Assembly (NCBI RefSeq): GCF_001194135.2
Contig: NC_068981.1
Span: 159,293,077 to 159,357,076 of the forward strand
Direction of reading: 5' to 3'
From: Octopus bimaculoides
Lineage: Eukaryota
DNA: 64,000 nt
The notes below the pieces were generated by a model, which saw only the letters and a program-made list of their open reading frames with translations, did not search any database and was not told the DNA's origin. The number at the start of each line of letters is the position of its first letter. Positions within the stretch are counted from its first letter, which is position 1. Below are positions 27,822 to 46,519 of the stretch, piece by piece. Made by a program: the position numbers and the translations under genes.

Positions 27822-27832
27822 TGGCTATAAAT

Positions 27833-28782: not shown

Positions 28783-28989
28783 TCATGGGTTTGTTTCTGC
28801 TGTAGTAAAATCCATTGACATTGCAGTGGATGTGGTCTGAGAGTTGGGATTCGCTACTGAAGATGTCGATGTTGGAAAAATGGAAAGCGTCATTCCCTGG
28901 AGGTGACTGGTGGAGCTGTCTTCATAGGAATCGTCAATAGGTTCAGACTTAATGAACATCATTTGATCACTTTCAAATGTGTGTGGAAT
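28783..28989 (-). CDS. Terminal coding exon E (IKSEP motif, acidic and Ser/Thr-rich tail)
   Basis: Acceptor ctttattgcttttgcAG, phase 0; IPHTFESDQMMFIKSEPIDDSYEDSSTSH...TAETNP, then TGA TAA. IKSE fits the psi-K-x-E SUMO consensus. Confidence 0.82.
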   Translation of the reverse strand: MPHTFESDQMMFIKSEPIDDSYEDSSTSHLQGMTLSIFPTSTSSVANPNSQTTSTAMSMDFTTAETNP

Positions 28990-30410
28990 CTGCAAAAGCA
29001 ATAAAGTGAACAGGAAATTTAAAATTGGGTTAAAAAGACATAATTAATACTATTATATATATATAATATTATACACACATGCATACGCACACACATATGT
29101 ATGTATATAAATATGAGGGAACATTACTCAATGACATATAGTTTGTAACGTGAATGATTAACAGTTTATGTTGTTGCTATTGCATCAATACAGTTGCTTA
29201 CACCTTGATTCAAGATCAATAATAGTTGTAAAAAGGTGAAAATATAAGAGTTCATATGATGCACATACAAGGAAAGCCTCCCTGAATTGTGGTTGAGAAG
29301 TTGGTCTTTAGTAAAAAAAGAAATCAAAGATTTCAGTAAAACAGAGGCAACAAGATTGCCAATTCCATTTGTAGGCTTTGATTTAGCCAGGATACTCTAC
29401 AGGTGGCAAGAGTTTTAATTTTTAAGTTGTCAGATGTATTTTGATAATGAGATCATGTTATGTCTAACTGGACTTCTAAATGTATATGTGAATATCAGGT
29501 CTTAAAACAATTGGTAGTTTATCCATTATACGCTATGACAGAGTAGGAAAGACAGGCAATAATCTTTGGTTTGACCACTTTTTATTTCACCTTTAGAGCT
29601 ATCCCTAAAATATAGGGAACATCTGTAGTCTTTCAGCTTGTTAGAAATAGCTACCAAGTCTTATTTAGGTCACAACTTACCACCTTTATAAGAGAACACA
29701 TTGAACAATGTAGTCTTAGATATACGATATACTATAATTGGAAAATAGATGGGATGATCACAACTAGAATGCTGTTGATTATAGATCTGTTCAATCAGAG
29801 ATGGTCTGGGGTTAAACAAAAACAACACCATACATAAAATATATTTAAATGTTCTTATAATGAAGAATATATTTCATTACAATCATTTTTTAATGACAAA
29901 AATTGTAATTAAGCATATCTTGTTACTGATGTTTTTATGATTAAAGTTTAGATAGAAGATTATACAAAGAACTAATATTTGAAACTATATTGATTTTTTT
30001 AATGAATTCAATGTAGGCTTAAAAATGAAAAATGAAAAGAATACAATTATGAAAATCCAGTGCTGTATTTGAGACAAAATGAATTATAAAAAATAACAAG
30101 TAAATATCTTGCTTCAGTTTTGAACTATCACTCATAATCTCAAAAAAAAAAATTATTCTTTTAAAAATTAACTTAATGATTTATAAAGTCTTATGGTTAA
30201 AATTATGTCAGTGCAAAGTTACATGTAGAAAGATATTATTGAACTAGAAATGATGTCTCTTTTAAAAGGTCATTATATTATATATTTATTAGTCAAACTG
30301 AAAATATCTAACAGTTGAAGCTATTTATTTCAGCAACAAATTAAAGTCAGACTATAAAGGTCAGTAAAGCAAAATCTATTAAAAGAATAGGGCAACTAGG
30401 AAAGTAATGA

Positions 30411-30464
<54 letters not shown>

Positions 30465-30488
30465 TATTATTATTATTATTATCATTAT

Positions 30489-30731
30489 TGCCTTTGCACA
30501 GCTTCTAACGCTAGAGATGTACTACAGTGTCAGCTGTTCACTACCAGTGAACTAAGGTAACACCACTTATTTTTCAAGCATCTTCTGGCGGATTCGAGCG
30601 GTTCCAAGCAGTGCTGTTTTCTGCACGCATTCCATCCTTATTGCAGCCCCTATTTGTTCCACGTACTTCTCGAGAGTTTTGCTTATCTCTGTTGCTTTTT
30701 GTTCTCCACATGATAACCTTGACCTTGGTAC
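30489..30731 (-). mobile_element. 3' end of a second R4/Dong-clade element, opposite strand
   Basis: Translates KTLEKYVEQIGAAIRMECVQKTALLGTARIRQKMLEK*; 3' UTR ends in a (TAA)n tail that reads (att)n at 30463-30488. Confidence 0.78.
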
Positions 30732-32335
30732 TTAGTAAAATAAAGCTGGGGTACTGACTAAAGGGAAAATCTCAAACAATCAATCACCTCCTCTTCATGG
30801 ATGATTTGAAACTGTATGGCAAGGATGAGACACAAGTGAGTTTCTTGGTGAGCATGGTCTACTGTTTAGTGCTGATATTAGAATAGAATTTGGACTCAAG
30901 AAGTGTAGAATAATCAACCTAAAAAGAGGCAAGGTACAATCTTTAGCAGGGACAGAATTACCAAATAGAGACTTGATTAAACAAATTGAAACAGAAGGCT
31001 ACAAATACCTTGGTGTACTAGAGTTCAATGAAATAATGAGAAGGAAATGAAAGAGCAACTGAGGAAGGCTAAGCGATTTCCAAAGACTAAGGTTGGTGTG
31101 GTGCTCAAAATTGACTGGATGGAATAAAATCCAAGCAGTTAATACATGTGCGGTAACATCACTTTGGTATGGAGTCAAAGTTGTAAAATGGCAAAAGAGA
31201 AAAGTGGTGAAAATGGATATGAAGACCAGAAAAATGTTGATAGTACACAGAGCCTTCCATCCTAAGAGTGACACCAATGGGCTGTATTTGTCCAGAAGAA
31301 AGGGTGGGAGAGGTTTGATCAGTTGCCAGGAAAGCAGAGGAAAACAGCGTAGGGTGGTGTATAAAAAATGCTATAGAGCCATTGTCGAAAGATATGAAGA
31401 AGGCTGCCATCATCAAAACTGAAAATTGTGTAATGAAAGAAAAATTTAAAGAAGAAATGAACACACACAAAAAAAAGAAAATGCATGGAAGGAATAAAAA
31501 AAATGTATGGTGAGTTTGCAAGAGATGTGAATGTCAAGACAGATACAGAGGACCAGTGGCTATGGATGAGGAGAAATGACCTGAAGATAGAGACAGCAGC
31601 AGCTCAAGAACAAGTGTTAAGGACTAACTATGTGAAGTGCAGAATAGACAATGCTGCCAACAGTGACAAATGCAGAAAGTGTGGTGAGATAGATGAGATG
31701 GTAAGACACATCATTAGCAAATGCCTGAAATTGACACAACATGAATACAAAAGTCACCATGACAATATGGCAAGAATGATCCATTGGGAGCTACGTGGAA
31801 ATCATGGCTAACAAAGAGCAAAGATGTGGTATGAGAAGACCCCGGAAGGAGTCACTAAGAATGAGAATTGCAAAATCCTGTGGGATGCAATAATTCAGTG
31901 CAATCACCTGACCAGACATCAGAAGCCGGACATTGTTGTGGTGAATAAAAAAGAAAGAACATGCATGATAATCAACATAGTATGTCCTGGTGACAACAGG
32001 ATCAATGTGAGAGAAGAAGAAAAAATAAACAACTATGATGATTTGAAGTGGAAAATACACAGGTTGTGGTCAATGTGGAGATTAGATGTGATACCAATAG
32101 TAATTGGCACACTTGGAAGTATCAGCACTCAACTATCAACTTGACTGAAAAAATTTGTGCAAGTGTGAAGGTAGAACACCTACAAAAATCAGTATTGCTT
32201 GGAACTACAAGAATTCTTTGCAGGGTTCTCAAAACATGACCAGTAAACAAGTGTCCCCTCAGTCTGCTGGCTGTGGACAGCTGACACTTCCCAATATACC
32301 CAGTAAAATAAGCTGTGACTTTTCATTACATGATA
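30732..32335 (+). mobile_element. 5'-truncated R4/Dong-clade non-LTR retrotransposon (RT-CCHC-RLE), degenerate
   Basis: HLLFMDDLKLYGK (RT), AAQEQVLRTNY, CRKCGE...HIISKC (CCHC), KILWD...KPDIVVVNKKERTCMII (RLE), LQKSVLLGTTRIL; followed by a (GAT)n(AAT)n tail. Confidence 0.88.
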
Positions 32336-32336
32336 T

Positions 32337-32400
<64 letters not shown>

Positions 32401-32418
32401 AATAATAATAAATAAATA

Positions 32419-32992
32419 AATGCCCTGATGCAGTACCAGGCAGTGGCTCTCATGGTTTCTGATCTTAATTGATTGGAAGTGTTATCATGTACGTTGTTTT
32501 GTCTTGGTATAAAAGATGGGCTACAGCAAATATTCTGCTTAATACCACAAATTTGCTTGTCAGTTGTTTGACCTTAACCAGTTGAGCATGTCCCTTGGTG
32601 GCTGACGATATGTGCNNNNNNNNNNNNNNNNNNNNNNNNNNNNNNNNNNNNNNNNNNNNNNNNNNNNNNNNNNNNNNNNNNNNNNNNNNNNNNNNNNNNN
32701 NNNNNNNNNNNNNNNNNNNNNNNNNNNNNNNNNNNNNNNNNNNNNNNNNNNNNNNNNNNNNNNNNNNNNNNNNNNNNNNNNNNNNNNNNNNNNNNNNNNN
32801 NNNNNNNNNNNNNNNNNNNNNNNNNNNNNNNNNNNNNNNNNNNNNNNNNNNNNNNNNNNNNNNNNNNNNNNNNNNNNNNNNNNNNNNNNNNNNCTGGTGT
32901 ACCCTTATCAGACGGGTAGTCATGATGGGTATATTGGGCTTTGTATATTTTACCCCAGTGTCACTTTGATGACATGCACTGCTCTCTCACTC

Positions 32993-32993
<1 letters not shown>
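32419..32993. mobile_element. Family D copy 2 (central gap)
   Basis: atgccctgatgcagtaccaggcagtggctctcatgg...gcactgctctctcactcaataataat. Confidence 0.7.
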
Positions 32994-33048
<55 letters not shown>

Positions 33049-33079
33049 CAACAACAACAATAATAATAATAATAATAAT

Positions 33080-33297
33080 AATGGTTTCAAATTTTGCCAT
33101 GAGAACAGCCATTTTGGAAGAGGGGATGAGTCCATTACATTGACCCCAGTGTTCAACTGGTACTTACTTTATCAACCCCAAAAGGATGAAAGGCAAAGTT
33201 GACCTCGGCAGAATTTGAACTCAAAATGCTAAGACAGATGAAACGAGTTAAGCATTTTGTACAGCATGCTAACGATTCTGCCAGCTCACTGCCTTTA

Positions 33298-33358
<61 letters not shown>

Positions 33359-33570
33359 TCAAATTTTGGTACAGGGCCAGCAGTTTTTTGAGGGGAGGGG
33401 ACAAGTTGATTACATCAAACCCAGCACAGAACTAGTTCTTATTTCATCAACCTTGAAAAGATTAAGGGCAAAGGCAACCCCAAGGGAATTTGAATACAGA
33501 ATGTGAAGATGAATGAAATACCATATTAAGCTTTTTGTCCAATGCAATAATAATTGTCAGCTTGCCACCT
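33080..33570 (-). mobile_element. Tandem SINE family B copies (more at 34200-34350, 35705-35890, 35905-36125)
   Basis: Each begins on + with a variant of ttcaaattttggcacaagg after TAA-rich sequence. Confidence 0.72.
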
Positions 33571-33700
33571 TTCTAATAATGATGATAAATTCAAATTTAT
33601 AATAATATAAGAAAATATAATAAATTTTACTTTAATTTTGTAAGATAAATGACTGCATTAAAAGCTTAAGGCCAGTTCCAACCTTTGGCAGAGAAATCTG

Positions 33701-33734
<34 letters not shown>

Positions 33735-34424
33735 GTAATTCATGAACTAAATGTGAGATACAAGCCAAAGACAAAAAGTTACTAAATTTGTTGAAATAAT
33801 TTACTGTCTTCATGATAGGAAGAAGACAGTAGCTATATCACATGAATGGGTATGTTTTTCTTTTCTTTTTTAAGATTTAGGAATATACCAGCTTCTATAT
33901 ACATCTGAAAAAAGTAAAAAAAAAAAAAAAAAAAAAAAANNNNNNNNNNAAAAAAAAAAAAAAAAAGAAAAAATAACTGAATATCAGGAACTGGACTAAT
34001 TGACTATAATGCAGTAGATTGGTAGAAGGTCTATGTCAGCCATTCTGTGTCCTTAAACAAGTCTCATTATTCTACTTACTTTGCATTGTCAGAAATAAAC
34101 ATGTTTAATACCAATCTTAGGAGGATTGTCTAGTTTTGTAAAACTTTGTTGTAACATTGATTTGTAAATAATCAAAATCTACACAGCCAAAACATTTATA
34201 ATGGTTTCAAATTTTGGCACAAGGTAAACAATTTAGTAGATAAGTCTATTACACTGACTGCAGTAGCATTTGAACTCAGAATGTAAAGCTGGAAGAAATG
34301 CTGCTAAGTATGTTGTCTGGCATGCTAATGGTTCTGCCAGCTCACTGTCCAAACTATTAATATAGTATTTATAATAATAAGAAAAAAATTTTTTTAAACA
34401 CAAAGTAATCCTAAAATTCTTCAA

Positions 34425-34695
34425 GTGCCGATGGACTGGCTCCTGCGCGGGTGGCATGTAAAATACACCATTTCAAGCGTGGCCGTCGCCAGTACCACCT
34501 GACTGGCCCTCGTGCCAGTGGCACATAAAGCACCCACTACACTCTCGGAGTGGTTGGCGTTAGGAAGGGCATCCAGCTGTAGAAACTCTGCCAAATCAAA
34601 TTGGAGCCTGGTGTCGCCTCCTGGTCCACCAGTCCTCAGTCAAATTATCCAACCCATGCTAGCATGGAAAGTGGACGTTAAACGACGACGACGAA
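34425..34695 (+). mobile_element. Young RTE 3' tail copy (others at 48930-49080, 53475-53725, 61283-61445)
   Basis: CpG-intact ggagtggttggcgttaggaagggcatccagctgtagaaactctgccaaatc...ggacgttaaacgacga. Confidence 0.72.
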
Positions 34696-36172
34696 CTCCA
34701 TATGACAATAGTCTTGATCTTTGAGAAAATGTTAAAATCAGTCACTCTAGAAACAACTGTAAAGCTCCAAGACTCTGGTTTACAAATCTGCTGTCTTCTC
34801 ACTGAACTTCTTCTGCTGTTATTAAAGTAAACACAGATTCCTTGAGCTGGCTCATCTTGTGTCAGTTGTACTTAGGTCTCACTGATACATTCATCATTCC
34901 ACTTCTCATTTCTCATAAGGTTCACCTTATTCACTGGTTTCTACTCTACTCATTACCATTAACCATTAACCATTACCATTAACCATTTGCCCCCAACCCT
35001 TTCTCCTTAAAATGTTGGTCCTCTGATGCTCTCTCCTAGCTCAAGTTTTTCCTGCTGTTATTGGCTTACAATTTTTCAAGTAGGACATCAATTGAGTAGA
35101 TCTCACAGCTCTCAGGGAGCCACCAAAGGTCATCAGTACAACTCCTTATTCCAGACAAACTCATTAAAAAATAAATCTTAAAACTGAAATTAATTTATTC
35201 TTGTAAAAAAGAGATAGTTAAGTAATGGTTTAATGATGAAAGAGAATTCAACGTCAATGGAAATTAAAAGATTTCTTTAGATATTCAAATGGATCAATCA
35301 TTCATTTTAGTAACTAATCAACTTCTGGAATCTTTAATGTGAATTTATTTGGAATATCAATAATTTTTACTGAATTTTGTCAAGAGTATGTGTCTCTATA
35401 GAATTCATTCAAAGATATATCCAGTATATAAATTGATGTATGTTTTACAAATTAGATATGCAAATATCTCATAAACTGTTTTACATAAATATGTAAAATG
35501 ATATGTTTGCATATCACAGAAAAGTAAAATAAGAACTTGATTTGAATAAATCATGAACTTATGGTAAACACACCAATGCACATCAAATCAAAACTAATAC
35601 AAAGTAGAATTGAAAATCCAGCTGCAAAATAATTGTGAATTACCATGGAGATAAAGAAAATAAAAAAGGAAATTAATAGAAGACTAGATTTGGTTAAATT
35701 TAATAATGGTTTCAAATTTTGGCACAAGGTCAGCAACTTCAGGGGAGGGGGTTAAGTTGATTACGTTGACCCCAGTGCTCAATTAGTACTTATCAATCCC
35801 AGCAGCATTTGAACTCAGAATGTAAAAGCAGGTGAAATGCTGCTAAGCATTTTGCCCAGTGCGCTAACAATTCTGTCAGCTTGCTGCCATAAGTTAAATC
35901 CAATACTGACTTCTAACACTGACACAAGGACACAAATTTCTTGGGAAGACATAGTCAATTAAATCACATTTCAATACTGGGCTGGTACTTCATTTTATCA
36001 CCCACAGAAGGGTGAAAGATAAAGTTAATCATTGCAACATTTGAACTCAGAATATAAGGGTTGAAACTAAATACTGCAAAGCATTATGTTTAACACACTA
36101 CTGATTCAGTCAGTCCACTGCCCTTGTTAAATTCAACAAATATTAAAAAGAAGAAAGAAAAGAAATTCTTAC

Positions 36173-36215
36173 CTGTCTTGTGAAGTTTTTCATAAAATCT
36201 ACACCAAAATATACT
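36173..36215 (-). CDS. Coding exon D (43 nt); end of repeat 2
   Basis: 1 nt + 14 codons VYFGVDFMKNFTRQ; strong donor CAG|GTAAGA, phase 0, matching the terminal exon. Confidence 0.85.
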
Positions 36216-36609
36216 GTAGTGAAAAGGTTAAGGAATCCAATACAATTTATAAACGAACATTACAAGAACCATTAAAATAATGGAATGATTTCAATATATT
36301 AAATTGAAATAAAAACAAAATGTTGTCATCTTGTAAATATCAAATCACTTGTTCATTTGTTTTGCATCTGTTTTTCCCATGCTGGTATGGGCAGGATGAA
36401 TATACTATTCAGGCATTGTTTTATAGTCAGATACAGTTCTTCGTGCTAACCCTTTCTTGCTTTTCAAGTAAGGAATTTTTTACTGTACATAGCTTCAAAG
36501 GTACAAAGCATGTAGGTGATCTATAGACAGGAGAAATACCAACAGAATGTCACATAAATGGCCATGCATGCATGCGAGTGCCCATGTGCACACACACTCT
36601 ACGATAAGT

Positions 36610-36845
36610 TTCTTTCAGTTTCTTATTTCTTTACTGCCCGCAAGGGGCTACACACAGAGGGGACAAACAAATGGATTAAGTTGATTAGATCGACCCCAGT
36701 GCGTAACTGGTACTTAATTTATCGACCCCGAAAGGATGAACGGCAAAGTCGACCTCGGCGGAATTTGAACTCAGAACGTAGCAGCAAACGAAATACCGCA
36801 AAGCATTTCGCCCGGTGGGGTAACATTTCTGCTAGCTCGCCGCCT
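36610..36845 (-). mobile_element. SINE family B, young copy with variant tail, inside U12 intron 2
   Basis: CpG-intact body; tail tttgtcccctctgtgtgtagccccttgcgggcagtaaagaaataag. Confidence 0.8.
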
Positions 36846-37119
36846 TCAGTTTCTTTCAGTTTCTGTCTACCAAATCCACTCACAAGGCTTTGATTGATCT
36901 GAGATGCTTCAGTAGAAAACACTTGCCCAAGGTTTCACACAGTGAGACTGAACCCGAAACCATGTGGTTGAGAAGCCATCTTCTTAACCTTACAATCAGG
37001 CTTATACTCCTTGATAAGAAATGTTTTAATGCAATAAAGACCTAAAATTTAATGTTTCTCTCTGGTCCCAGTCAAACATAAAATCTGTTGTCAAAAATTC
37101 CCATCTATCTGGCTCAAAA

Positions 37120-37155
<36 letters not shown>

Positions 37156-37325
37156 TCTCTCTCAGAGATCTTTTATTTCCTCAACTATTCTCAACTCCTT
37201 TGTACATCTTTTAAACAAGACAAAAACTCTGTAATGCTGAATAAGTTAAAATTCTTTCTTCAGAAAAATGCAAACAAGAGACAAAACAGTTTTCTTCATT
37301 TAAATCATAATTTATGGAAAGTAGA

Positions 37326-37909: not shown

Positions 37910-38084
37910 GTCTTAAACTTCCCTTTTCTCTTCATATGAATACTAGGGAACAAAAACCGCATTGCTCGATTGCACTGCACACCCCAATATTGTACACCAG
38001 GTTCCTCAATTTTCTGTCCTAATAATTGAAGGACCTCATCACGTGAGATGCCCATGTCAAAGTCACCAGTCCAGAAAACAAGTT
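37910..38084 (-). CDS. Coding exon C; winged-helix-like repeat 2
   Basis: Acceptor tttattttatAG; 175 nt (2 nt + 57 codons + 2 nt): LVFWTGDFDMGISRDEVLQLLGQKIEEPGVQYWGVQCNRAMRFLFPSIHMKRKGKFK. Ends AC|ATATCCTTT. Confidence 0.9.
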
Positions 38085-38438
38085 CTATAAAATAAATCAC
38101 AATATATTAGAAAACAATTTTAAATATGTACTCAGTGTGTGTACATGCATAGGTATGAAGAGGTATTTACATATCTGTAGTCAGTCCAACTTTATATATG
38201 AAAATAACAGTGAAACATTTTCTAAAATGCATAATAGAATGTAAAGCTATTACCAGAATATATCATACTGAAGACATCTTTTGAGGGTAATTTAACCTGG
38301 CATAATGCATCCACATTACAGGTTACTGAATACGGATAGAAATGGCAGCTTTGATTTGAAATGAAATAACTCAACCAGGGATCAAACCTACTCACATATT
38401 CAGCAAGCAAAGAGCTTATATTTATGCCAAAACACTTA

Positions 38439-38472
<34 letters not shown>

Positions 38473-38596
38473 TGTGTGCATACATGCGTACATGTGTGTG
38501 CAGCCCCTCAGCTTACCAGCCCTGGTCAAACCAGCCAACCCATGCCAGCATGGACAATGAATGTTAAATGATGATGATATATCTAATCTGATCTAA

Positions 38597-40253
38597 TCTA
38601 ATAATATATAAAACAGATGTGTGCATATTCACTTTTCACGCGAAAATGGCTTCACCAATTGCTTCATATTTGTGATGCATGAATAATTTGACCTCAGACA
38701 AATAATAGGCTGTTCATTTGATTTTTTTTATAAAAAATTATTAAAAATAAAAAAATATTGCTTTTTTATATTACATTCACGTCTTTGAAAGTTTTTAAAA
38801 TATTTACTTTCAGTTTTCTAGCGTCAGTGACATTACATATCTCTTTATGTGTATCTCTCTATCCATCTCTATCTCTTGTAACATATCTCTCTATCTATAT
38901 CTCTTGTTTTCACTTTCATTTTTCAAACATTCTTTTCACTTTCAGTTTTCATACGCCACTGTTTAACTTCCATGTTATTGTTTTCACTGTAAGTCTAAGT
39001 TTCCAATCGCTATTTACAAACAAACAACGACAAATTACTGACAGAAAGAAGTTCACAATTACTGATGTAAGTAATTTCATAATTTACTGACAGAAGTATC
39101 TTCATAAATTTCATTTCAATCCCTATGGTTTTGTGTTTTTCTGTTGTTGACAGTTTCTTTCTGGTTCCTTCGATACTGGCTCTTAGGTTCACTGAGTGAC
39201 AAATTTCACTTCAACCCGTACAATACTTTATTTTCCATTAAAATTTCTTATTTTCTTTCTGCTCGTCATATTGAGAAACATAATTTCTATTACCAAGTTA
39301 TTTTCATTGTTTACTATCTTCTGCACTTATGTATTTCTGTATACATGTATAACCATACCTAGAAGGAAAGTGTCAATTTTGTCGGCATAATTACAGATTT
39401 CTGCCAACCCCCATTTTTGGATGATCATAACTTTCAGAAAAATGGAAGATGATGCAAACTGGGATGCCACTCTTACAGAGGCACAAATGTGCAAGTCTCC
39501 TATGCAACTGAGAAATCTCTTCTTCATCATGCAGCTTGATGGGTGAGAATGTCTTTATTCCAAGGATACATCTCATCTCAAATGATCTCTCCTTTCAGTT
39601 CAAGAGACTGCAGTTTCCTGTTAAACTTAGCTTTGTAATGTCTATCAACAAAGCACAAGGTCAATCTCTAAAGGTGGTAGGACTTAACCTCCTTCAACCT
39701 TGTCTCTCACATGGTCAGCTGTATGTTGGATGTTCTAGAGTTGGAGATGAAAAGAACCTCTACATTCTCAGTGATAAACATGGCAAGACAGAAAACAGTG
39801 TATGAAGAAGCACTTACATGAATAGTAGGTCCATATTATATACAGAAGTGTAAAACCATTGAGTGTTAAAGTATTACTATTACACTTTCCCTTTTCGACT
39901 GTCATGCATGAATGTATATCTGTGTGTATAAAAGTGAAACAATAATGTGATATATTCGCTGTCTGTTTGTGTGTGTGTACTCTATGCACAGCCTTTCATT
40001 GGTTATAATCTGTACCTGTTTTTTGGTTACAAAATAATTTAGACAAATGTGTATTTACTTTATATACATATGTGAGTTGAAAACTTTCTTTTCCCATTTC
40101 ACTTAATGTCTATGTTCCATGTTGGGATGGGTTGTAGAGTCACATAAAAAGTTGGTATCTCAGCTACTAGCAGTTGAGACCTGCATAAACTAGACGGCAT
40201 TTTAAAATTTCATTATTTTCTTTAACCTGGGCAACGCCGAGTATTTCTGCTAG
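38597..40253 (+). mobile_element. Internally deleted Helitron with both termini
   Basis: 5' a|TCTAATAATATATAAAA. 3' degenerate hairpin cctgggcaacgccgag followed by tatttctgCTAG|t (40250-40253). Coding remnants EDDANWDATLTEAQ...QLRNLF (~39440-39530) and PIF1-type helicase C-terminus FKRLQFPVKLSFVMSINKAQGQSL...SHGQLYVGCSRV (39536-39805). Confidence 0.85.
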
Positions 40254-41507
40254 TATACATATACATATACATATATATATATATATATATATATTCCATC
40301 AAAAACTATGTATTTACTTCAGAATAATTCTATAGTTTATGGAAGCATGAATACATTAATTATATATAAGAAAGAAAGAAGGGTATATTTTAAGGGATAA
40401 AAGATTTATAAGGACCTATGATGATTAATGGGTGATGATGACAGTGATTTATCTCTAGACATATTTTTATGAAAATCAACAGGGAAAATATAGTTTCATT
40501 AAAAAATCTTATTGGTTGAATTAGCTTTTCATTTTTCAAGGTTCAATGATAAATGTCTAAAGAAGAGAGAGAGTTAAAGCCAATTAGCACAATTTTAACT
40601 CTAGTCATAAGTACTGAGTTGTGTCTGAAAGCAAAACTTTGTTATTCTTCATATTTCAATTAAACTGCACCAATTAAATAGAGTTTGATTACATTCAATC
40701 TACCCTACCATCCTAACCAAATCATTTTCAGAATTACTGAAGCCATTGTTATTGTTTCCCCCTCTTTAAACTAACTACAAAACTAACACAGGCAACAAAA
40801 TACCTCTTTCCTTAATTAAGGTGATTAAGGAAGAATTATTGGCACCCTCGATTTAGTATATTCATTCTATGTTATGCACACTAGTATTTTAAGCTAATGC
40901 TGTTTCAACTGTGTACATCAATTTAATTCTAGCCTGGTTGGCTTCCGCACAAATCAACAAATGTTTTTTTTTACCACTTTCTATATTGAAGCAAGCATTT
41001 TGTGCTTGACTCAGAGTGTCCAGAGTATTCATCACTGAGGAGACCAACCCAGGTTGAAACACTGTGTCTGATGATCCACTGGCATCATGAGCAAAGCTCC
41101 ATGTTTTTTTTAACAAACAAATCACTTTGAAAAATTTCTCTGAGACAAATTATTACAATTATTGTCATTTCCATCTGTGTGTACATATAAGCATATATAT
41201 CACTGTATCACTTTATCGACCTGATTATTGGATGTTGTTATAAACAAACGTTTCTTCATATTGTTAGATATCATGATATCTATACAGATAGATGTATATA
41301 TTCATGTAAATGTATGCACATGCACACTCCAATATTTTAATTTACTGTGGCTTCAAGTGTGTATATTTGATACAGCATGGTATTAGTGCTAGGAAACAAA
41401 TCAGTAAGTTTTTTAATTCGTAAGTCTGATGTGGCTTTTATTTTGTCGAAATTTTTTTTCTAACAAAGGAGAAAATGAAAATAGAAATTTAAGAAAATAA
41501 GAATATA

Positions 41508-41546
<39 letters not shown>

Positions 41547-41550
41547 GTAC

Positions 41551-41684
41551 CTGGAAGAAATTGCAGAATCTTCTCCAGATCTTGAGAAAGATCTCTCAGT
41601 GGCTGATAAGTCACATTCTCAGAATCGCTTAGTTCTTCTTGTTCTTGCAATTGCTCTATAAGAGCCACACCAAAATAGTACGTT
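41551..41684 (-). CDS. Coding exon B; end of repeat 1 plus acidic linker
   Basis: 134 nt (1 nt + 44 codons + 1 nt): TYYFGVALIEQLQEQEELSDSENVTYQPLRDLSQDLEKILQFLP. Donor CCAG|GTACTA (phase 1) matches the phase of exon C. Confidence 0.88.
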
Positions 41685-42453
41685 GTCAGCACGTTAAGGA
41701 GAATTAGATCAATAATCATTGGGAAAAAAATAGTGGAATCAAGAAAGAAGGTTTTGATATAAAAGATTCAAACATCAATAATGTCCCTGATCCCACGGTG
41801 TTTTTCTTTTTTAGCTCTTGTAACTTATCTCTTCCTGCAATGCTTCTTTAGATAATAGCACTTAACAAAATCAATCATCTACATGTAAAACTATGATCAT
41901 GTTTTGAATATAAATTAGTCCAAAGAACGTACTACAAACAGAAATTTCTGGAACACTGAGCCTGAACCATAAACTTCATTATGGCAATGCAGCAGTAGTG
42001 GTAGTGGTGGTGAGGATCATTTAGAAAATTAGGTCAACTGACCAAGTTGTAGCTGTGACCATTATTGTAGGAAACTATGGTATTTATACATCATTTATGC
42101 ATCAGCAATGTTAAAGATAACATCAAGGGACAGTTAATAAGTGTCAAATTAAATACCAAGCTTAAAAATTTAATTCGTGGAATCATTAGAGGAATAAATG
42201 ACACAAAAATATATAGACAAATACATCCATTTTCTTTGCAACTATCACAGAAGCATACATGTAATTCAGTCAGTATAGGTCCAAGTATGGCAGCATGGTA
42301 AGAAGTTTGCTTCCCAACCACATGGTTCTGGGTTGAGTCCCACTGCATGGTACCTTGGGTAAGTGTCTTCTACTATAGCTTTGAGCCAACCAAAGCCTTG
42401 TGAATGGATTTGGTAGACGGAAACTGAAAGAAGCCCTTCATATATAATATATG

Positions 42454-42507
<54 letters not shown>

Positions 42508-43129
42508 ATAATGTAAGTGTATATTTTTGATAGAATGCTGGTGCATTAAAAGAGAATTTAGGCATAGGAAGAATTAGATGCAAAGTGCAAGAGAGAAGAC
42601 TATGGTGATTTGGTCATGTGATGCGGATGGATGCTGACAGGTTCATAAAAAAAAGTGTCAGTCTCTCAAAGTGTCTGAAACATGTGGAAGAGGGAAACCC
42701 AGGAAGACAGGGGACAAAGTACTGAAGGACAACCTCGGGATGCTGAACCTTTCATAGACAGATAGATATATATGTGTGTCTATATGTCTGTTTTTGCTCA
42801 CCTACCACTGCTTGACAACTGGTGTTGGTGTTTATTTCCCTGTAACTTAGCAGTTTGGCAAAAGAGAAAGAAAGAATAAATACCAAGCTAAAAAAAAAAG
42901 TATTGGAATCAATTCATTCAGCAAAAAATTTTACAAAGCAGCACCTCAGCACATATGCACACACACACACATGGCTGTGTTGCAAAAAGTTTGCTTCCGA
43001 GCCATATGGTTCCTGGTTCAGTCCTCCATGACACCTGAAGCAAATGTCTTCTACTACAGCCCTGGGCCAACCAAAGTGTTCTGAGTGAATTTAGTAGACA
43101 GAAACTGAAAGAAACCCGAGTGTAAGTGT

Positions 43130-43918
43130 CCTGAGAGAAATGTTGGACATAAGAAGCATCAGATGTGGTGTGCAAGAGAGATGACTGTGCTGGTACGGCC
43201 ATGTATTGTGTATGGATGAGGAGATCTGTATGAAGAAGTGTCACTCCCTAAGAGTGGAAGGAACCCGTGGAAGAAGGAGACCTAAGAAGACATGGGACGA
43301 GGTGGTGAAGCATGACCCTTGAACGTTGGGCCTCACAGAGGCAATGACGAAAGACCGAGACCTCTGAAGATATGTTGACCTTTGGATTGTCGGGCAACAT
43401 GCCATGCTTGAGGAGACCTATTGAGTCAAGTAAATCAAAATCAAAATCTAAATCAAAACCAAGTCACAATCAAATGGAAATTGTAGTTGTGACTGATGCC
43501 AGTGCCACCTGACTGGCTCCCATGCTGGTGGCACGCAATAAGCACCATTCATGTGTGGGTCATTGCCAGTGCTGCCTGACTGGCTCCCCATGCCAGTGGC
43601 ACATATAAACACCGTCTGAACCTGGTCGATGCCAGCCCCCTCACCCCGACTGGCTCCTGTGGTGGTGGCACATAAAAAGCACATTCTGAGCATGGTAGAT
43701 GCCAGTGCCACCTGACTGCTTCCCATGCAGGTGCCACATAAAAAGCACCCACTACACTCTCGGAGTGTTTGGCGTTAGAAAAGGCATCCAGCTGTAGAAA
43801 CATTACCAGATCAGATTGGGGCCTGGTGAGACCTCCTGGCTTGCCAGTCTCCAGTCAAACCGCCCAGTCCATGCCAGCATGGGAAATGGACGTTAAATGA
43901 TGATGATGATGATGATGA
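43130..43918 (+). mobile_element. RTE-clade LINE 3' end (ORF2 C-terminus, tandem-repeat 3' UTR, (ATG)n tail)
   Basis: Degenerate WYGHV...VEGTRGRRRPKKTWDEVVKHD; repeated gccagtgcc-ctgactggctcc-gtggcac units; ttggcgttagaaaaggcatccagctgtagaaa tail motif. Confidence 0.8.
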
Positions 43919-45433
43919 ATGTCATGATAAAAATATAAACTAATTCTTCTGTTTTGTTCAGCCTGTGTGTGTGTGCGTGCGTGTCTTTATACTTTCTGGT
44001 AATTGCTCAGCTACAGATAGTGTTACTGCTGTCATTTTGCCTGTCAGCAAATAATGCACTGTCCTTGTGCCTTCAAAGATATGAAATAAGACATCCTCTA
44101 CTTGATAATTAGGGAAGGGTTAATGACAGGAAGTAGGACATCTGGCTGTAAAACAATACTTCAACTATCTATCTGGAAAATCGATTTAAAAGCAAACTAA
44201 TGAATACACACACACACATGCCCTGCTGCATGGGTAATGTCAGTGTGCATGCACAACATGTGAATGACTTAAGAAGAAAACTGGGTGTAAGAGGCATCAG
44301 ATGCTGTGTGCAAAAGAGAAGACTGCACTGGTTTGGTCATGTGATACAAAAATTAATAAGGTAACTAGCAATTTCAACAACCTGTAGCTACTATATACAA
44401 AACATGTTTGTGCAGACACAGAGTGAATAGGATGGACTGACATTAGACACGCCCAAAACCCTGTCAAAGCTATGATATATGGGAGCCTATTCCTGTTCAT
44501 AGATCACATTGAAGTAATAAAGTTTCAACCTACAAGTGTACATATGAAATGCAATACAGTGCAAAGTATCAAAAACAAAAGTAGAATCCCTGAACAACAG
44601 GTGGTAATATACACACCTGAAGTGGACACAATGCAAACAGCTTTCTGATACCATGAAACAATCAACAGATTTCAGCAATAGAGTAACAAAAGAATTTCTT
44701 AAACTGCATTTAGGTGGTGGAACAGGTGCCCTAGATACAACAGACACAAAGCCACGTACTTCAGCGCACAAGGTTACTTCAACTGTTGAACTCAGGATAT
44801 TGACTCCATACACAACATCCTAATATTAAATGAACTATACTTTTAAATATCTGAGGGTTTTTTCCATGACTAACTAGAGTAAATGAGCTCCTGTCTCTAC
44901 CTGAAAGATCTTGTCACATGCAAGGAGGTGATATGCAGAGAACATACAGAAACAGATCAGCTAACAAACACATCAGATGTAGAACTATACATATTAAAAT
45001 ATGTCTGCTTTTGTTTTGATAAGAAAGTAAGAAACTACATGGAGCTGCTATGTATTTGCATGAAGATATAATATCAAAAGCAGTGTTGCCACACTCAAAC
45101 ACTGTTTGTGACACAAAGAAAAATTTAACATGGTTATGCAAAAAACATAACACACAACACATTGCCCACAAGATATCTTAAACAATAGCACAAAATTTGA
45201 GGAAAGTTTTAGACAGGAGCAGCAATAACTAGTTTGAATCAACATGCCAATGAATTCATATTGAGTGGCTTTAATATTTCAAACCTCAAGTAGACAAAAG
45301 GTTATATTCTCTTGAGAAAACAACAGCATGACTGTAGGTCAGCTGTTTCTGCTTAACCTCATGGGCATGATGTCCAAATATGTTACTATATAAGAGATCC
45401 CTGATGTTCAATTAATGCAAAAATGATCCACAA

Positions 45434-45862
45434 TATTTTGTTGTATCTTGGGAGGGTCATTATACCAACAATAAATACATGCACTGGTTCTATTTCACTT
45501 CTGTATTATATGTCAATTGGTTAATTATCTTACCATTTAACTAGCTGATATTTTTGATTAATCATTTAGTTCACTGATCAATCAGTTAGGTTTGTCAAAG
45601 TCCTTTTGCTACCATTCACAATCTCATCAATGACATTCCCTCTTTACTCCATGTCTGCTTCACCTGCTGAGGTTGCAAATGGTAACAAAGAGACTTTGAC
45701 AAACTTAACTGATTTACTGATTAGCTGAATGATCATAAAACAACTGATTAGTAAATTGGTTAAATAGTTAACCAATTGTCAAATAAAAAACAAAGAAGTG
45801 AAATATAACTAGTGCATGTATTTCCTATTGACATAATGACCCTCCCAAGATACAGCAAAATA
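45434..45862. repeat. Long inverted repeat (~190-bp arms, 48-bp spacer)
   Basis: 45434-45623 aligns along its length with the reverse complement of 45672-45862; a related single arm lies at ~53728-53860. Confidence 0.82.
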
Positions 45863-46350
45863 GGTCTCAACCCACAATTTCACAACAAGATTCTTGCAAA
45901 CCAAACACAAAAATGAAAATGATCCTCAATATGTCTTGCATAATATTTATTCTCTGACTATATTGTAGTAAAATTGATAATGTTTGGTCCAAAGAAACTT
46001 TTGGCTCAGCACCTAACAAAAATGCGCTCAATCATGTCTAACAAATATCAACAAGGTTTAATGAAAACCAATTCAACAGAATCTTGATTCATGTATGTGA
46101 CTGTAAATTCTATACACTTAAGAATGTTTCAAATATCTTTATAATTTGTGTTAGAGAATAAAAAAATGACACTAAGATGCATTTAAAATTACAATAATAC
46201 AAATATGCACAAGAGCAACTGTACACACACATACATGCATGTGCACATATTAATAAGATTATTCATAAACTAATAAACAATAGGTATTAATATCAATCTT
46301 AAATTTTTTTATTATTTTTTTTTTTATTCAATGTGGAAGAAAAAGGATAT

Positions 46351-46519
46351 TTCTTGAACTTCCCTTTCCTCTGAGCCATACTGCTAGGAAACTCTTCTCT
46401 CACAGCCTTGTTACATGCTGGCCCCCAATGAACCATTTCTGGAATGTTCAGCAGCATACTAATTTTCTGAAGAAGTAGGTCACGTGATACATAACCTTTA
46501 GCACAGCCAACTAATAACT
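46351..46519 (-). CDS. Coding exon A (most upstream confidently placed) of a spliced gene; winged-helix-like repeat 1
   Basis: Acceptor ttattattttcAG; 169 nt (2 nt + 55 codons + 2 nt): LLVGCAKGYVSRDLLLQKISMLLNIPEMVHWGPACNKAVREEFPSSMAQRKGKFK. Ends AA|ATATCCTTTTT (U12 donor). Homologous to exon C. Confidence 0.88.

What the first reader, a model, noticed from the sequence alone, without database searches (positions are those of the whole stretch)
28783..46519. Probable transcription factor with tandem RFX-like winged-helix domains, invisible to the ORF track
Seen: five exons (728 nt) join in one open frame: repeat 1, acidic linker (EQLQEQEELSDSE), repeat 2, then FIKSEPIDD and a Ser/Thr tail. 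The repeats share SRD..L, W-G-x-x-C-N-[KR]-A-[VM]-R-x-x-F-P-S and RKGKFK..YFGV. Established: RFX DNA-binding domains end in a helix, an F(P) turn and a basic beta-wing with an aromatic-x-Y-x-G strand (consensus FGKLIR..F....RRLG.RG.SKYHYYGI), and canonical RFX proteins have one such domain. Inference: this is a divergent two-domain RFX-like DNA-binding protein with a SUMO site. I cannot assign a gene name.
Basis: partly seen in the sequence, partly recalled or inferred. Interest (0 to 1): 0.8.

Follow-up and report, generated by a model that had tools for sequence, protein, structure and literature searches.

The report
Octopus gene with two RFX-like domains
The region holds the last five coding exons of a real, already catalogued but uncharacterised octopus zinc-finger gene whose tail carries two copies of a divergent RFX-type winged-helix domain. 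Each copy is split by a rare minor-spliceosome (AT-AC) intron at exactly the place where vertebrate RFX7 has one.

Summary
On the minus strand five exons (46519-46351, 41684-41551, 38084-37910, 36218-36173, 28989-28783) join into 728 coding nt plus a stop. The 243-aa product is 100% identical to residues 849-1091 of RefSeq XP_052828171.1 (Octopus bimaculoides, "uncharacterized protein").

Both assembly gaps lie inside the last intron and do not touch the reading frame.

The two repeats are 44% identical (E 1e-18). Each folds with high confidence (pLDDT about 90) as a winged helix, and the best solved-structure match is the RFX5 DNA-binding domain. A profile-profile comparison with RFX domains gives 75% probability (E 2.5e-5).

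Each repeat is interrupted in its wing by an AT-AC U12-type intron. The intron has the same phase, and sits in the same alignment column, as the AT-AC intron I found in vertebrate RFX7.

The family has no Pfam model. An exhaustive search found only 59 relatives. Every named one is a mollusc or the brachiopod Lingula, and none is characterised.

Best reading: a lophotrochozoan multi-zinc-finger DNA-binding protein with a tandem, RFX-derived winged-helix pair. It is a new variant of a known kind. DNA binding itself is inferred, not shown.

The parts
46351..46519 (-). Exon E1 (169 nt, enters in phase 1). It encodes repeat 1 from ELLVGCAKGYVSRD through WGPACNKAVREEFP to QRKGKFK and ends in the split Lys codon AA|.
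   Evidence: 100% identical to XP_052828171.1 residues 849-905.
41685..46350 (-). Intron 1, a U12-type AT-AC intron in phase 2. The 5' splice site ATATCCTTT is at 46350-46342. The branch site TCCTTAAC is at 41700-41693, 8 nt before the terminal AC.
   Evidence: The junction is confirmed by the protein reading GKFKKTYYFGV.
41551..41684 (-). Exon E2 (134 nt). It encodes the last strand of repeat 1 (TYYFGVAL), the acidic linker EQLQEQEELSDSENVTY (41656-41606) and the first helix of repeat 2 (QPLRDLSQDLEKILQFLP, 41605-41552).
   Evidence: The linker is disordered in the AlphaFold2 tandem model.
38085..41550 (-). Intron 2, an ordinary GT-AG intron in phase 1. Its position (LP|EL) is equivalent to that of the intron that precedes E1.
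37910..38084 (-). Exon E3 (175 nt). It encodes repeat 2 from ELVFWTGDFDMGISRDE through WGVQCNRAMRFLFP to KRKGKFK and ends in the split Thr codon AC|.
36219..37909 (-). Intron 3, a U12-type AT-AC intron in phase 2, at the position equivalent to intron 1. The 5' splice site ATATCCTTT is at 37909-37901. The branch site TCCTTAAC is at 36234-36227, 8 nt before the terminal AC.
   Evidence: The junction is confirmed by GKFKTTVYFGV.
36173..36218 (-). Exon E4 (46 nt). It encodes the last strand of repeat 2 (TVYFGVDFMKNFTRQ).
28990..36172 (-). Intron 4 (GT-AG). It contains both assembly gaps (32616-32893 and 33940-33949) and retroelement-like ORFs.
28783..28989 (-). Exon E5, coding part. It encodes IPHTFESDQMM, the SUMO-consensus-like FIKSEPIDD (28956-28930), the Ser/Thr-rich tail, and the stop TGA at 28785-28783.
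   Evidence: 100% identical to XP_052828171.1 residues 1023-1091.

Best explanation
Window 28783-46519 (minus strand) is the 3' end of a genuine Octopus bimaculoides gene. The gene encodes a 1091-aa multi-C2H2-zinc-finger protein (RefSeq XP_052828171.1) that is probably nuclear.

Its C-terminus carries two tandem winged-helix domains, distant relatives of the RFX DNA-binding domain. They probably arose when an RFX5/7-like winged-helix unit, already carrying an AT-AC U12 intron in its wing, was recruited and then duplicated in tandem, introns included. The family is found in molluscs and a brachiopod.

Shown:
- the exon structure and the identity to the RefSeq protein;
- the internal repeat;
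- the U12 splice signals;
- the winged-helix prediction with RFX5 as nearest solved structure;
- the shared intron position with RFX7;
- the narrow taxonomic range.

Inferred: each winged helix binds DNA chiefly through its invariant basic wing (R-K-G-K-[FY]-K) and the Arg/Lys residues of helix 3, as RFX1 and RFX5 do. The two domains, joined by a flexible acidic linker of about 20 residues, would read two half-sites from one polypeptide. That would replace the dimerisation canonical RFX proteins need. The adjacent C2H2 finger would add contacts, as would the AT-hook present in other molluscs.

Specificity probably differs from the X-box, because two base-contacting RFX positions (R62, Y67) are not kept. 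Because both minor introns cut the wing, retaining either one would truncate the protein, which would make output depend on minor-spliceosome activity.
For: Gene and exons:
- 100% identity of the spliced product to XP_052828171.1 residues 849-1091.
- Intron-free orthologous contigs exist: P0001 and P0009, 946 aa on a 3.2-kb contig.

Repeat: 44% identity, E 1e-18. Both introns of the unit (LP|EL in phase 1 and the wing intron in phase 2) are duplicated.

Fold:
- AlphaFold2 gives pLDDT 89.5 and pTM 0.81 with topology H1-S1-H2-H3-S2-W1-S3.
- In the tandem model both domains are confident, the linkers are disordered and pTM is 0.41, so the domains behave as independent units.
- Foldseek against the PDB ranks RFX5 (8zjr_M) first for the single domain (E 1e-3, probability 1.0, rmsd 3.1 A). 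For the tandem model RFX5 ranks second by E-value but is the only probability-1.00 hit.
- The viral library returns D5-type primase winged helices. Bona fide RFX domains also hit that Pfam family, Pox_D5.

Sequence:
- hhalign gives 75% probability and E 2.5e-5 over 57 columns.
- RFX_DNA_binding is the most recurrent sub-threshold Pfam hit. In the divergent relative P0056 the match covers profile positions 14-76 of 79.

Gene structure:
- RFX7 exon fragments from many vertebrates stop at, or read through...RRLG[TM]RGKSK|YP.
- The DNA shows AA|ATATCCTTT...CCTTAAT(N12)AC|.
- The split codon lies 5 residues before the conserved Gly of strand S3 in RFX7 (K^YCYSG) and in both octopus repeats (K^TYYFG, T^TVYFG). 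It is phase 2 in all three and falls in the same hhalign column.

U12 signals:
- They are the only RTATCCTTT and TCCTTAAC-N5-10-AC matches in the 64-kb window.
- They are conserved in orthologues, with one GT-AG U12 subtype switch.

DNA-contact residues: the RFX1 contacts are listed in PMC12311785. In this family R19, R48, R58 and G60 are invariant, and K45 is K or R. R57 is K (repeat 2) or Q (repeat 1). K66 is K (repeat 1) or T (repeat 2).

Context:
- An AT-hook (RGRPRK) follows domain 2 in Haliotis and Mizuhopecten, and a similar RGRGRPK in Lingula.
- C2H2 fingers lie upstream.
Against: - No Pfam family reaches threshold. The octopus repeats themselves give no RFX hit even at E <= 10.
- An HMM search of PDB sequences finds no RFX entry.
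- hhalign probability is only 75%. The RFX profile was built from six sequences recalled from memory, though each was verified against PF02257.
- Foldseek E-values are modest (1e-3) and sequence identity to RFX5 is 13%.
- The wing is two residues shorter than in RFX, and RFX1 contacts R62 and Y67 are not conserved.
- Some RFX5/7-like fragments of unknown, probably invertebrate, origin (P0128-P0130) lack the wing intron, so its antiquity within RFX is unproven.
- There are no binding, expression or localisation data for any family member.
- Winged helices can also bind RNA or proteins.
Confidence: 0.75

Rival explanations
1. The domains are RFX-derived winged helices that no longer bind DNA specifically. 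They would serve instead as protein-protein or RNA-binding modules, and the zinc fingers would do the targeting.
For: - Many lower-ranked Foldseek hits are non-DNA winged helices such as the cullin WHB, ESCRT-II, kleisin and ROQ domains.
- Two RFX1 base contacts (R62, Y67) are lost.
- The linker between the domains is strongly acidic.
Against: - The basic wing R-K-G-K-x-K and the Arg residues equivalent to RFX1 R19, R48 and R58 are invariant across molluscs and Lingula in both repeats. Purifying selection is therefore acting on exactly the RFX DNA-contact surface.
- An AT-hook directly follows domain 2 in most orthologues.
- The non-DNA winged-helix hits have poor TM-scores (0.3-0.5) or an rmsd above 6 A.
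Confidence: 0.15
2. The resemblance to RFX is convergent, or reflects only the generic winged-helix fold. On this view the family is an independent winged-helix lineage, for example one derived from a viral or mobile-element D5-type primase winged helix, and the coincidence of intron position is chance.
For: - All sequence matches to RFX are sub-threshold.
- The viral library gives many D5-primase and phage winged-helix hits, with E from 3e-4 to 1e-2.
- One member also gives a weak Linker_histone hit.
Against: - An intron of the rare AT-AC U12 class sits in the same phase and the same alignment column as in RFX7, in both repeats. U12 introns are a small fraction of a percent of introns and are rarely gained (established knowledge).
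- No primase, helicase or transposase domain is present, the gene is not multi-copy, and only 59 relatives were found among 1.84 billion representatives.
- RFX domains themselves hit Pox_D5, so the D5 hits are expected for an RFX-type fold.
Confidence: 0.08
3. The exons are a decaying pseudogene, or a chance open frame assembled by eye.
For: None found. The only point in its favour is that the original 2015 annotation split the locus into fragments (A0A0L8I311 of 185 aa, A0A0L8I3H3 of 132 aa and A0A0L8I321 of 852 aa).
Against: - The frame is intact over 243 codons.
- The product is identical to the RefSeq model and 81-90% identical to other octopods.
- The family is conserved to bivalves, gastropods and Lingula, with 47 invariant columns in the tandem-region alignment.
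- Spliced contigs exist.
- The fragmentation is explained by gene predictors failing at AT-AC introns.
Confidence: 0.02

Closest known systems
RFX5 / RFX7 (regulatory factor X family, RFX-type winged-helix DNA-binding domain, Pfam PF02257)
   Same: - The winged-helix topology is the same, and RFX5 is the best solved-structure match.
- The ...R..FP....[RK]R.G...K.x.Y.G signature of helix 3, the turn and the wing is shared.
- Residues equivalent to RFX1 R19, K45, R48, R58 and G60 are kept.
- An AT-AC U12 intron in phase 2 sits at the same wing position as in vertebrate RFX7.
- Like RFX5 and RFX7, there is no match to the RFX1-3 type dimerisation region.
   Different: - It is below the Pfam threshold.
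- It has two domains in tandem instead of one.
- The wing is 2 residues shorter and there is a 4-residue insertion before helix 3.
- RFX1 contacts R62 and Y67 are not conserved.
- The domains are embedded at the C-terminus of a protein with C2H2 and U1-like fingers.
- The other intron of the domain is at a different place: LP|EL here, DEYK|SYC in RFX7.
- It is restricted to molluscs and a brachiopod.
ARID2 RFX-like domain (a lone RFX-type winged helix inside a non-RFX protein; from my own knowledge of UniProt/PROSITE PS51526)
   Same: It is a precedent for an RFX-type winged helix recruited into a different multidomain chromatin or DNA-binding protein that also has C2H2 fingers.
   Different: ARID2 has one copy, an ARID domain and a broad animal distribution. 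No sequence comparison with ARID2 was made here.
D5-type primase-helicase winged helix (Pfam Pox_D5, PF03288) of large DNA viruses and phages
   Same: It has the same winged-helix subtype by fold. Genuine RFX domains also match Pox_D5.
   Different: No primase or helicase domains are present. This is a cellular, intron-bearing, single-copy gene. None of the 27 family members gave a listed Pox_D5 sequence hit.
Other tandem winged-helix proteins (Stn1, ESCRT-II, cullins, the kleisin-interacting MukE/JetB/Nse1-3)
   Same: They have two winged helices in one chain and appear as weak Foldseek hits to the tandem model.
   Different: The alignments have an rmsd of 14-25 A and low probability. In those proteins the two domains pack together, whereas here pTM 0.41 and a disordered linker indicate independent domains.

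Membership tests
RFX transcription factor family (PF02257 / PROSITE PS51526) | Sequence match to the RFX_DNA_binding profile at or above the curated threshold (27 bits) | tested here: not met
   The window peptide gives no Pfam hit at E <= 10. Among 27 family domains, 3 give sub-threshold hits, the best 17.6 bits at E 0.006.
RFX transcription factor family (PF02257 / PROSITE PS51526) | RFX-type winged-helix fold (H1-S1-H2-H3-S2-wing-S3) | tested here: met
   The AlphaFold2 model has pLDDT 89.5 with that topology. RFX5 (8zjr_M) is the top PDB match, with probability 1.00 and TM 0.63/0.71. It is again the only probability-1.00 hit for the tandem model.
RFX transcription factor family (PF02257 / PROSITE PS51526) | Profile-profile homology to RFX DNA-binding domains | tested here: inconclusive
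   hhalign gives 75% probability, E 2.5e-5 and 57 aligned columns. This is supportive, but below the 90-95% usually taken as proof, and the RFX profile had only 6 sequences.
RFX transcription factor family (PF02257 / PROSITE PS51526) | Conservation of the RFX1 DNA-contact residues R19, K45, R48, R57, R58, G60, R62, K66, Y67 | tested here: inconclusive
   The contact list comes from PMC12311785. Mapped through the hhalign alignment onto alignment A3, the results are:
- R19, R48, R58 and G60 are invariant;
- K45 is K or R;
- R57 is K (repeat 2) or Q (repeat 1);
- K66 is K (repeat 1) or T (repeat 2);
- R62 falls in a 2-residue deletion;
- Y67 is replaced by T.
RFX transcription factor family (PF02257 / PROSITE PS51526) | One DNA-binding domain per chain, with family-specific flanking regions (dimerisation and B/C domains in RFX1-4, 6 and 8) | tested here: not met
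   There are two domains in tandem. Pfam scans of six full-length orthologues find no RFX accessory domain.
RFX transcription factor family (PF02257 / PROSITE PS51526) | Shared gene structure with an RFX member | tested here: met
   An AT-AC U12 intron in phase 2 lies 5 codons before the conserved S3 glycine in vertebrate RFX7 (L001, L002) and in both octopus repeats.
RFX transcription factor family (PF02257 / PROSITE PS51526) | Binding to X-box DNA | not testable with these tools
   This needs EMSA, SELEX or DAP-seq.
U12-type (minor spliceosome) AT-AC introns | 5' splice site /ATATCCTT immediately after the exon | tested here: met
   ATATCCTTT is found at 46350-46342 and 37909-37901. These are the only two RTATCCTTT matches on either strand of the window.
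U12-type (minor spliceosome) AT-AC introns | Branch site TCCTTAAC close to (about 8-15 nt from) a 3' terminal AC, with no long polypyrimidine tract | tested here: met
   TCCTTAAC at 41700-41693 and at 36234-36227 is each followed by 8 nt ending in AC. These two places account for all four window matches to TCCTTAAC-N5-10-AC (each matches twice). None of 100 shuffles reached that count.
U12-type (minor spliceosome) AT-AC introns | Junction actually used in the mature message | tested here: met
   The RefSeq protein and intron-free octopod contigs read GKFKKTYYFGV and GKFKTTVYFGV, which only the AT-AC junctions produce. Direct RNA evidence for this species was not inspected.
U12-type (minor spliceosome) AT-AC introns | Conservation of the U12 signals in orthologues | tested here: met
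   L004 and L005 have AC|ATATCCTTTC in repeat 2. L005 repeat 1 has AA|GTATCCTTTC...TCTCCTTAAT(N9)AG, the GT-AG U12 subtype. Read-through 'K[KT]YP[FL]' tails appear in predicted proteins of Pecten, Nucella, Littorina, Lottia, Sinanodonta and Pinctada.
SUMO consensus site (psi-K-x-E) | Hydrophobic-K-x-E motif, optionally followed by acidic residues | tested here: met
   IKSE followed by PIDDSYED lies at 28953-28918. It is kept in another octopod as IKSEPLDD but is absent at this place in Haliotis, Mizuhopecten and Lingula. Whether it is modified is not testable here.

The most novel reading that the evidence does not exclude
This would be an unrecognised RFX-derived transcription-factor family that arose in a lophotrochozoan ancestor. 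In it, tandem duplication of the winged helix replaced RFX dimerisation, so one chain reads a bipartite X-box-like site.

The twin AT-AC introns, inherited from an RFX5/7-like ancestor and kept in both wings, would act as a minor-spliceosome-dependent switch. Retaining either intron would yield truncated proteins lacking the rest of the wing.
Probability: 0.2. Interest if true: 0.75.

Novelty: new variant of a known kind. Interest (0 to 1): 0.55.

Why it matters
- It gives a structural and evolutionary identity to a conserved gene family of molluscs and a brachiopod that databases label only "uncharacterized", or misname "serine/threonine-protein kinase DDB_G0282963".
- It extends the RFX-type winged helix to a tandem, zinc-finger-linked architecture.
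- It offers a rare example of a U12 intron position serving as a marker of deep homology where sequence similarity has almost vanished.
- It exposes a systematic annotation failure. Gene predictors split or truncate this gene at its AT-AC introns in Octopus (2015 models), Mytilus, Pecten, Nucella, Littorina, Lottia, Sinanodonta and Pinctada, deleting or corrupting the DNA-binding wings.
- For cephalopod and mollusc developmental biology it nominates a lineage-restricted candidate transcription factor for functional work.

Tried and rejected
- **Pfam scan of the assembled peptide:** no hit at E <= 10.
- **PDB sequence searches:** phmmer and HMM searches returned only chance hits, namely histidyl-tRNA ligase and CCT gamma.
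- **My first splice guess:** acceptors 3 nt downstream gave KKYYFGV and KTVYFGV. I rejected it because orthologous spliced products read KKTYYFGV and KTTVYFGV. The acceptors at 41684 and 36218 still end the intron in AC.
- **Upstream exons:** I searched the window for the finger exon and the first helix of repeat 1 using P0001 and the full RefSeq protein. They are absent, so they lie beyond position 64000 or in a gap.
- **P0051:** this 1404-aa protein with ten EF-hand-like 'GEVSRDELL' repeats, hit in the exhaustive search, was dismissed as a spurious low-information match.
- **Transposable-element or viral origin:** considered because of the D5-primase fold hits, and rejected for lack of any enzymatic domain, low copy number and the shared RFX7 intron.
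- **Tandem-winged-helix families** (cullin, Stn1, ESCRT-II, KITE proteins): rejected because of the 14-25 A rmsd.
- **Literature:** searches found no description of this family.
- **Third large protein search:** I ran no further search on RFX5 or RFX1-3 exon boundaries. It would refine the conclusion, not change it.

Full report
**1. What is in the sequence**

The feature is on the minus strand.

| Exon | Window coordinates | Length |
|---|---|---|
| E1 | 46519-46351 | 169 nt |
| E2 | 41684-41551 | 134 nt |
| E3 | 38084-37910 | 175 nt |
| E4 | 36218-36173 | 46 nt |
| E5 | 28989-28783 | 207 nt, stop included |

The product is 243 aa:

(E)LLVGCAKGYVSRDLLLQKISMLLNIPEMVHWGPACNKAVREEFPSSMAQRKGKFKKTYYFGVALIEQLQEQEELSDSENVTYQPLRDLSQDLEKILQFLPELVFWTGDFDMGISRDEVLQLLGQKIEEPGVQYWGVQCNRAMRFLFPSIHMKRKGKFKTTVYFGVDFMKNFTRQIPHTFESDQMMFIKSEPIDD...TAETNP*

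The two repeats are 44% identical over 62 residues (E 1e-18).

**2. The gaps**

The window has 14 runs of N. The two flagged ones, 32616-32893 and 33940-33949, both lie inside intron 4 (36172-28990). They are 2.2-5.0 kb from the nearest exon edge.

The E4/E5 junction (FTRQ|IPHTF) is the junction present in the RefSeq protein and in the Octopus sinensis orthologue. The gaps therefore do not affect the frame. A cassette exon hidden in a gap cannot be formally excluded, but none of the four isoforms seen has one.

**3. It is a real, already modelled gene**

A search of 5.8 billion proteins and an exact cluster look-up identify the organism as Octopus bimaculoides. The 243-aa product is 100% identical to residues 849-1091 of XP_052828171.1, 'uncharacterized protein DDB_G0283357', 1091 aa. 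The Octopus sinensis orthologue (P0008) is misnamed 'probable serine/threonine-protein kinase DDB_G0282963'.

An intron-free contig from another octopod gives a partial product (P0001, 345 aa on 1280 nt). A further one from an unnamed species gives P0009 (946 aa on about 3.2 kb). These show that spliced messages exist.

The upstream 848 residues carry several C2H2 and U1-like fingers and low-complexity Q/S/N-rich stretches. The last C2H2 finger (YRCSFCDFVCYDIRDYEEHFIREH) and the first helix of repeat 1 are also upstream. None of this is encoded in the window.

The original 2015 annotation split the locus into three models: A0A0L8I321 (852 aa), A0A0L8I311 (185 aa) and A0A0L8I3H3 (132 aa). A0A0L8I311 skips both wings.

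**4. Two AT-AC minor introns at equivalent positions**

E1 ends ...GGG AAG TTC AAG AA| and is followed by ATATCCTTT. Upstream of E2 the sequence reads TTCTCCTTAACgtgctgAC|.

E3 ends ...AAG TTT AAG AC| and is followed by ATATCCTTT. Upstream of E4 the sequence reads ATTCCTTAACcttttcAC|.

These are textbook U12-type AT-AC signals, with the branch site ending 8 nt before the terminal AC. Both introns are phase 2. Both split the codon that follows G-K-F-K.

They are the only RTATCCTTT matches in the window. The two acceptor sites account for all four window matches to TCCTTAAC-N5-10-AC, and 0 of 100 shuffles reach that count.

My first acceptor guess was 3 nt off. The orthologous spliced products (GKFKKTYYFGV, GKFKTTVYFGV) fix the junctions.

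The GT-AG intron before each repeat (LP|EL, phase 1) is also at equivalent positions. The duplicated unit therefore included both introns.

Orthologue DNA confirms conservation:
- L004 and L005 have AC|ATATCCTTTC in repeat 2.
- L005 repeat 1 has AA|GTATCCTTTC ... TCTCCTTAATttctaatAG, a switch to the GT-AG U12 subtype.
- L003 (GCA_022702835.1) has lost the repeat-2 intron.

Many predicted proteins in other molluscs end in, or read into, '...K[KT]YP[FL]', which is the translated 5' splice site. These include models from Pecten, Nucella, Littorina, Lottia, Sinanodonta and Pinctada, and the Mytilus model deletes both wings. Gene predictors therefore fail systematically at these introns.

**5. Family and distribution**

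I built a profile of the repeat (A1) and ran it exhaustively against 1.84 billion representative proteins. It found only 59 proteins at E <= 1e-3.

Twelve are full-length proteins of 724-1480 aa, each with two repeats near the C-terminus. All named members are uncharacterised or hypothetical proteins from these taxa:
- cephalopods: Octopus;
- gastropods: Haliotis, Pomacea, Gigantopelta, Nucella, Littorina, Lottia;
- bivalves: Mizuhopecten, Pecten, Mytilus, Pinctada, Sinanodonta, Mya;
- the brachiopod Lingula.

No vertebrate, arthropod or other phylum appears among named hits. One hit (P0051, EF-hand repeats) is spurious.

A divergent single-domain relative comes from metagenomes (P0056/P0092, 962 aa). 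It has a more RFX-like wing, RRGRNKAYYYHGI.

No Pfam family covers the domain.

**6. Fold**

AlphaFold2 on repeat 2, with a 27-sequence alignment, gives pLDDT 89.5 and pTM 0.81. The order is H1(6-20)-S1-H2(33-44)-H3(53-63)-S2(68-72)-wing-S3(77-81), a canonical winged helix.

The model of finger plus both repeats shows four elements: a beta-beta-alpha finger, winged helix 1, a disordered acidic linker, and winged helix 2. Its pTM of 0.41 indicates independently folded units.

Foldseek against the PDB puts the RFX5 DNA-binding domain first (8zjr_M, nucleosome complex). The values are E 1e-3, probability 1.00, TM 0.63/0.71 and rmsd 3.1 A over 87 columns. The next hit has E 0.075, and all later hits are generic winged helices with TM 0.3-0.5.

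With the tandem model RFX5 is again the only probability-1.00 hit.

Against viral models the hits are D5-type primase-helicase winged helices. That is the same subtype, because genuine RFX domains also match Pfam Pox_D5.

**7. Sequence-level link to RFX**

I scanned all 27 family domains against all of Pfam at a permissive threshold. RFX_DNA_binding is the family hit by most members, 3 of 27, with best E 0.006. In P0056 the match spans profile positions 14-76 of 79.

I wrote six RFX domains (RFX1, 2, 4, 5, 6 and 7) from memory. Each was verified as bona fide, with E from 5e-29 to 5e-36 against PF02257.

hhalign of the family alignment against these six gives 75% probability, E 2.5e-5 and 57 columns.

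PMC12311785 restates the RFX1-DNA contacts as R19, K45, R48, R57, R58, G60, R62, K66 and Y67. Mapped through that alignment onto A3:

| RFX1 contact | In this family |
|---|---|
| R19 | the invariant Arg of the SRD motif |
| K45 | K or R |
| R48 | invariant R |
| R57 | K (repeat 2) or Q (repeat 1) |
| R58 | invariant R |
| G60 | invariant G |
| R62 | falls in a 2-residue deletion |
| K66 | K (repeat 1) or T (repeat 2) |
| Y67 | T |

The phosphate and groove-contact scaffold is thus retained. Two base-reading positions differ, which argues for DNA binding with a specificity other than the X-box.

**8.

A 2026 preprint reports RFX7 as a minor-intron gene (10.64898/2026.08.20.745718).

Searching with the RFX7 domain returned many vertebrate exon-level fragments. 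All stop at, or read through...ARRLG[TM]RGKSK|YP[FLS]. Examples are Pan 'RFX7 isoform 3', which ends at GKSK, and Cirrhinus, which continues KYPFVW.

The DNA of two such loci shows the following:
- L001: AAA TCT AA|ATATCCTTTA ... CCACCTTAATttttaaaatcAC|A TAT TGC TAT AGT GGA.
- L002: the same AT-AC arrangement.

RFX7 therefore has an AT-AC U12 intron in phase 2, in the Lys codon five residues before the conserved glycine of strand S3 (K^YCYSG). The octopus repeats have theirs at K^TYYFG and T^TVYFG.

The offset, the phase, the rare intron subclass and the hhalign column are all the same. hhalign computed that column without knowledge of introns.

U12 introns are well under 1% of introns and are rarely gained (established knowledge). 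I take this as the strongest single argument for common descent with an RFX5/7-like domain.

There is a caveat. Some RFX5/7-like fragments of unknown, probably invertebrate, origin (P0128-P0130) run through this position without an intron. The age of the intron within RFX is therefore not established.

**9. How it most likely works**

Shown: this is a conserved multi-finger protein ending in finger, winged helix, acidic linker and winged helix. In most orthologues an AT-hook follows the second domain:
- Haliotis: KRGRPRK
- Mizuhopecten: KRGRPRK
- P0009: RRGRPRK
- Lingula: RGRGRPK

In octopods that place is taken by a tail with a SUMO-consensus-like IKSEP motif.

Inferred: each winged helix contacts DNA mainly through its basic wing and helix 3, as in RFX1 and RFX5. 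Two independent domains on a flexible tether would read two half-sites from one chain. That would substitute for the dimerisation that canonical RFX proteins use on palindromic X-boxes. The adjacent finger and AT-hook would add affinity.

Retaining either minor intron would truncate the protein within a wing. Output could therefore depend on minor-spliceosome activity.

Rivals are listed with their weights in the Rival explanations section:
- a winged-helix pair that does not bind DNA;
- convergence, or a viral D5-type origin;
- a pseudogene.

**10. Comparison with known systems, and novelty**

The domain works like, and very probably descends from, the RFX-type winged helix. It fails the family's sequence threshold and its one-domain architecture, so I do not file it as a canonical RFX member.

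It is a new variant of a known kind: a tandem, zinc-finger-linked, lophotrochozoan-restricted RFX-like module. The gene is in RefSeq, but neither databases nor the searchable literature describe the domain.

Interest is moderate, for three reasons:
- It offers a tidy case of intron-position homology.
- It points to a candidate lineage-specific transcription factor.
- It gives a concrete warning about annotation at AT-AC introns.

Noticed in passing
window 41029-41074 (+), inside intron 2 of the minus-strand gene: Type I hammerhead ribozyme motif (Rfam RF00163). It scores 36.8 bits against a gathering score of 34, and the CUGA.GA...GAAA core is intact. It is a single copy within 39800-42300, and is possibly part of a Penelope-like or retrozyme repeat.
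   Followed up: partly
window 39536-39805 (+), intron 2: An 89-aa ORF (…[34 protein letters not shown]…) resembles the C-terminal motif of PIF1/Helitron-type SF1 helicases. There is only a weak Pfam Herpes_Helicase hit (E 0.0026). It is probably a Helitron remnant.
   Followed up: partly
window 31093-32144 (+), intron 4, next to the 32616-32893 gap: Three consecutive ORFs of 106-109 aa look like the tail of a non-LTR retrotransposon ORF2, including a CRKCG...H...C motif. They have no Pfam hit at E <= 0.01.
   Followed up: partly
Orthologue models: P0003 (Mytilus edulis), P0014 (Pecten maximus XP_033760957.1), P0015 (Nucella), P0019 (Littorina XP_070176158.1), P0022 (Lottia), P0026 (Sinanodonta), P0034 and P0042 (Pinctada), P0002/P0068/P0070 (Octopus bimaculoides 2015 models): Published gene models are truncated, split, or read through ('K[KT]YP[FL]...') at the two U12 introns, so the winged-helix wings are deleted or corrupted. 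This is a systematic annotation error at AT-AC introns.
   Followed up: yes
L005 315-627 (Logan SRR14864933 contig); L003 945-1000 (GCA_022702835.1): In one orthologue the repeat-1 minor intron is the GT-AG U12 subtype (GTATCCTTTC ... TCTCCTTAAT-N9-AG), while repeat 2 keeps ATATCC. In another genome the repeat-2 intron is absent (AAG ACC ACA TGT TAC TAT GGG). Subtype switching and intron loss both occur within the family.
   Followed up: partly
Orthologues P0010 (Haliotis), P0011 (Mizuhopecten), P0009, P0018 (Lingula), just after winged helix 2: An AT-hook-like motif (KRGRPRK or RGRGRPK) follows the second domain in most orthologues. It is missing in octopods, where the SUMO-like FIKSEP[IL]DD tail takes its place.
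   Followed up: partly
P0056 / P0092 (962 aa; ENA and JGI metagenome contigs): A divergent relative from an unidentified organism has a single winged helix and a more RFX-like wing (RRGRNKAYYYHGI), C2H2-like fingers and an IKTEPIE motif. It is the best 'bridge' sequence to PF02257 (E 0.006 over profile positions 14-76 of 79).
   Followed up: partly
L001 1549-1684 and L002 6166-6300 or so (vertebrate RFX7 loci): The RFX7 minor intron lies inside the DNA-binding wing (GKSK^YCYSG) and is of the AT-AC subtype. In L001 it is only about 135 nt long and open in frame, so a retained-intron product was predicted there (P0133).
   Followed up: yes
window, whole: There are fourteen assembly gaps. The window also has abundant microsatellites and low-complexity runs, and recurrent SINE-like segments (for example ORFs with ...LWLAQ.YSRKHLPKV... 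near 27725-28117, 36890-37045 and 42918-43244). No other conserved coding exons were recognised between 46520 and 64000 with the queries used.
   Followed up: no
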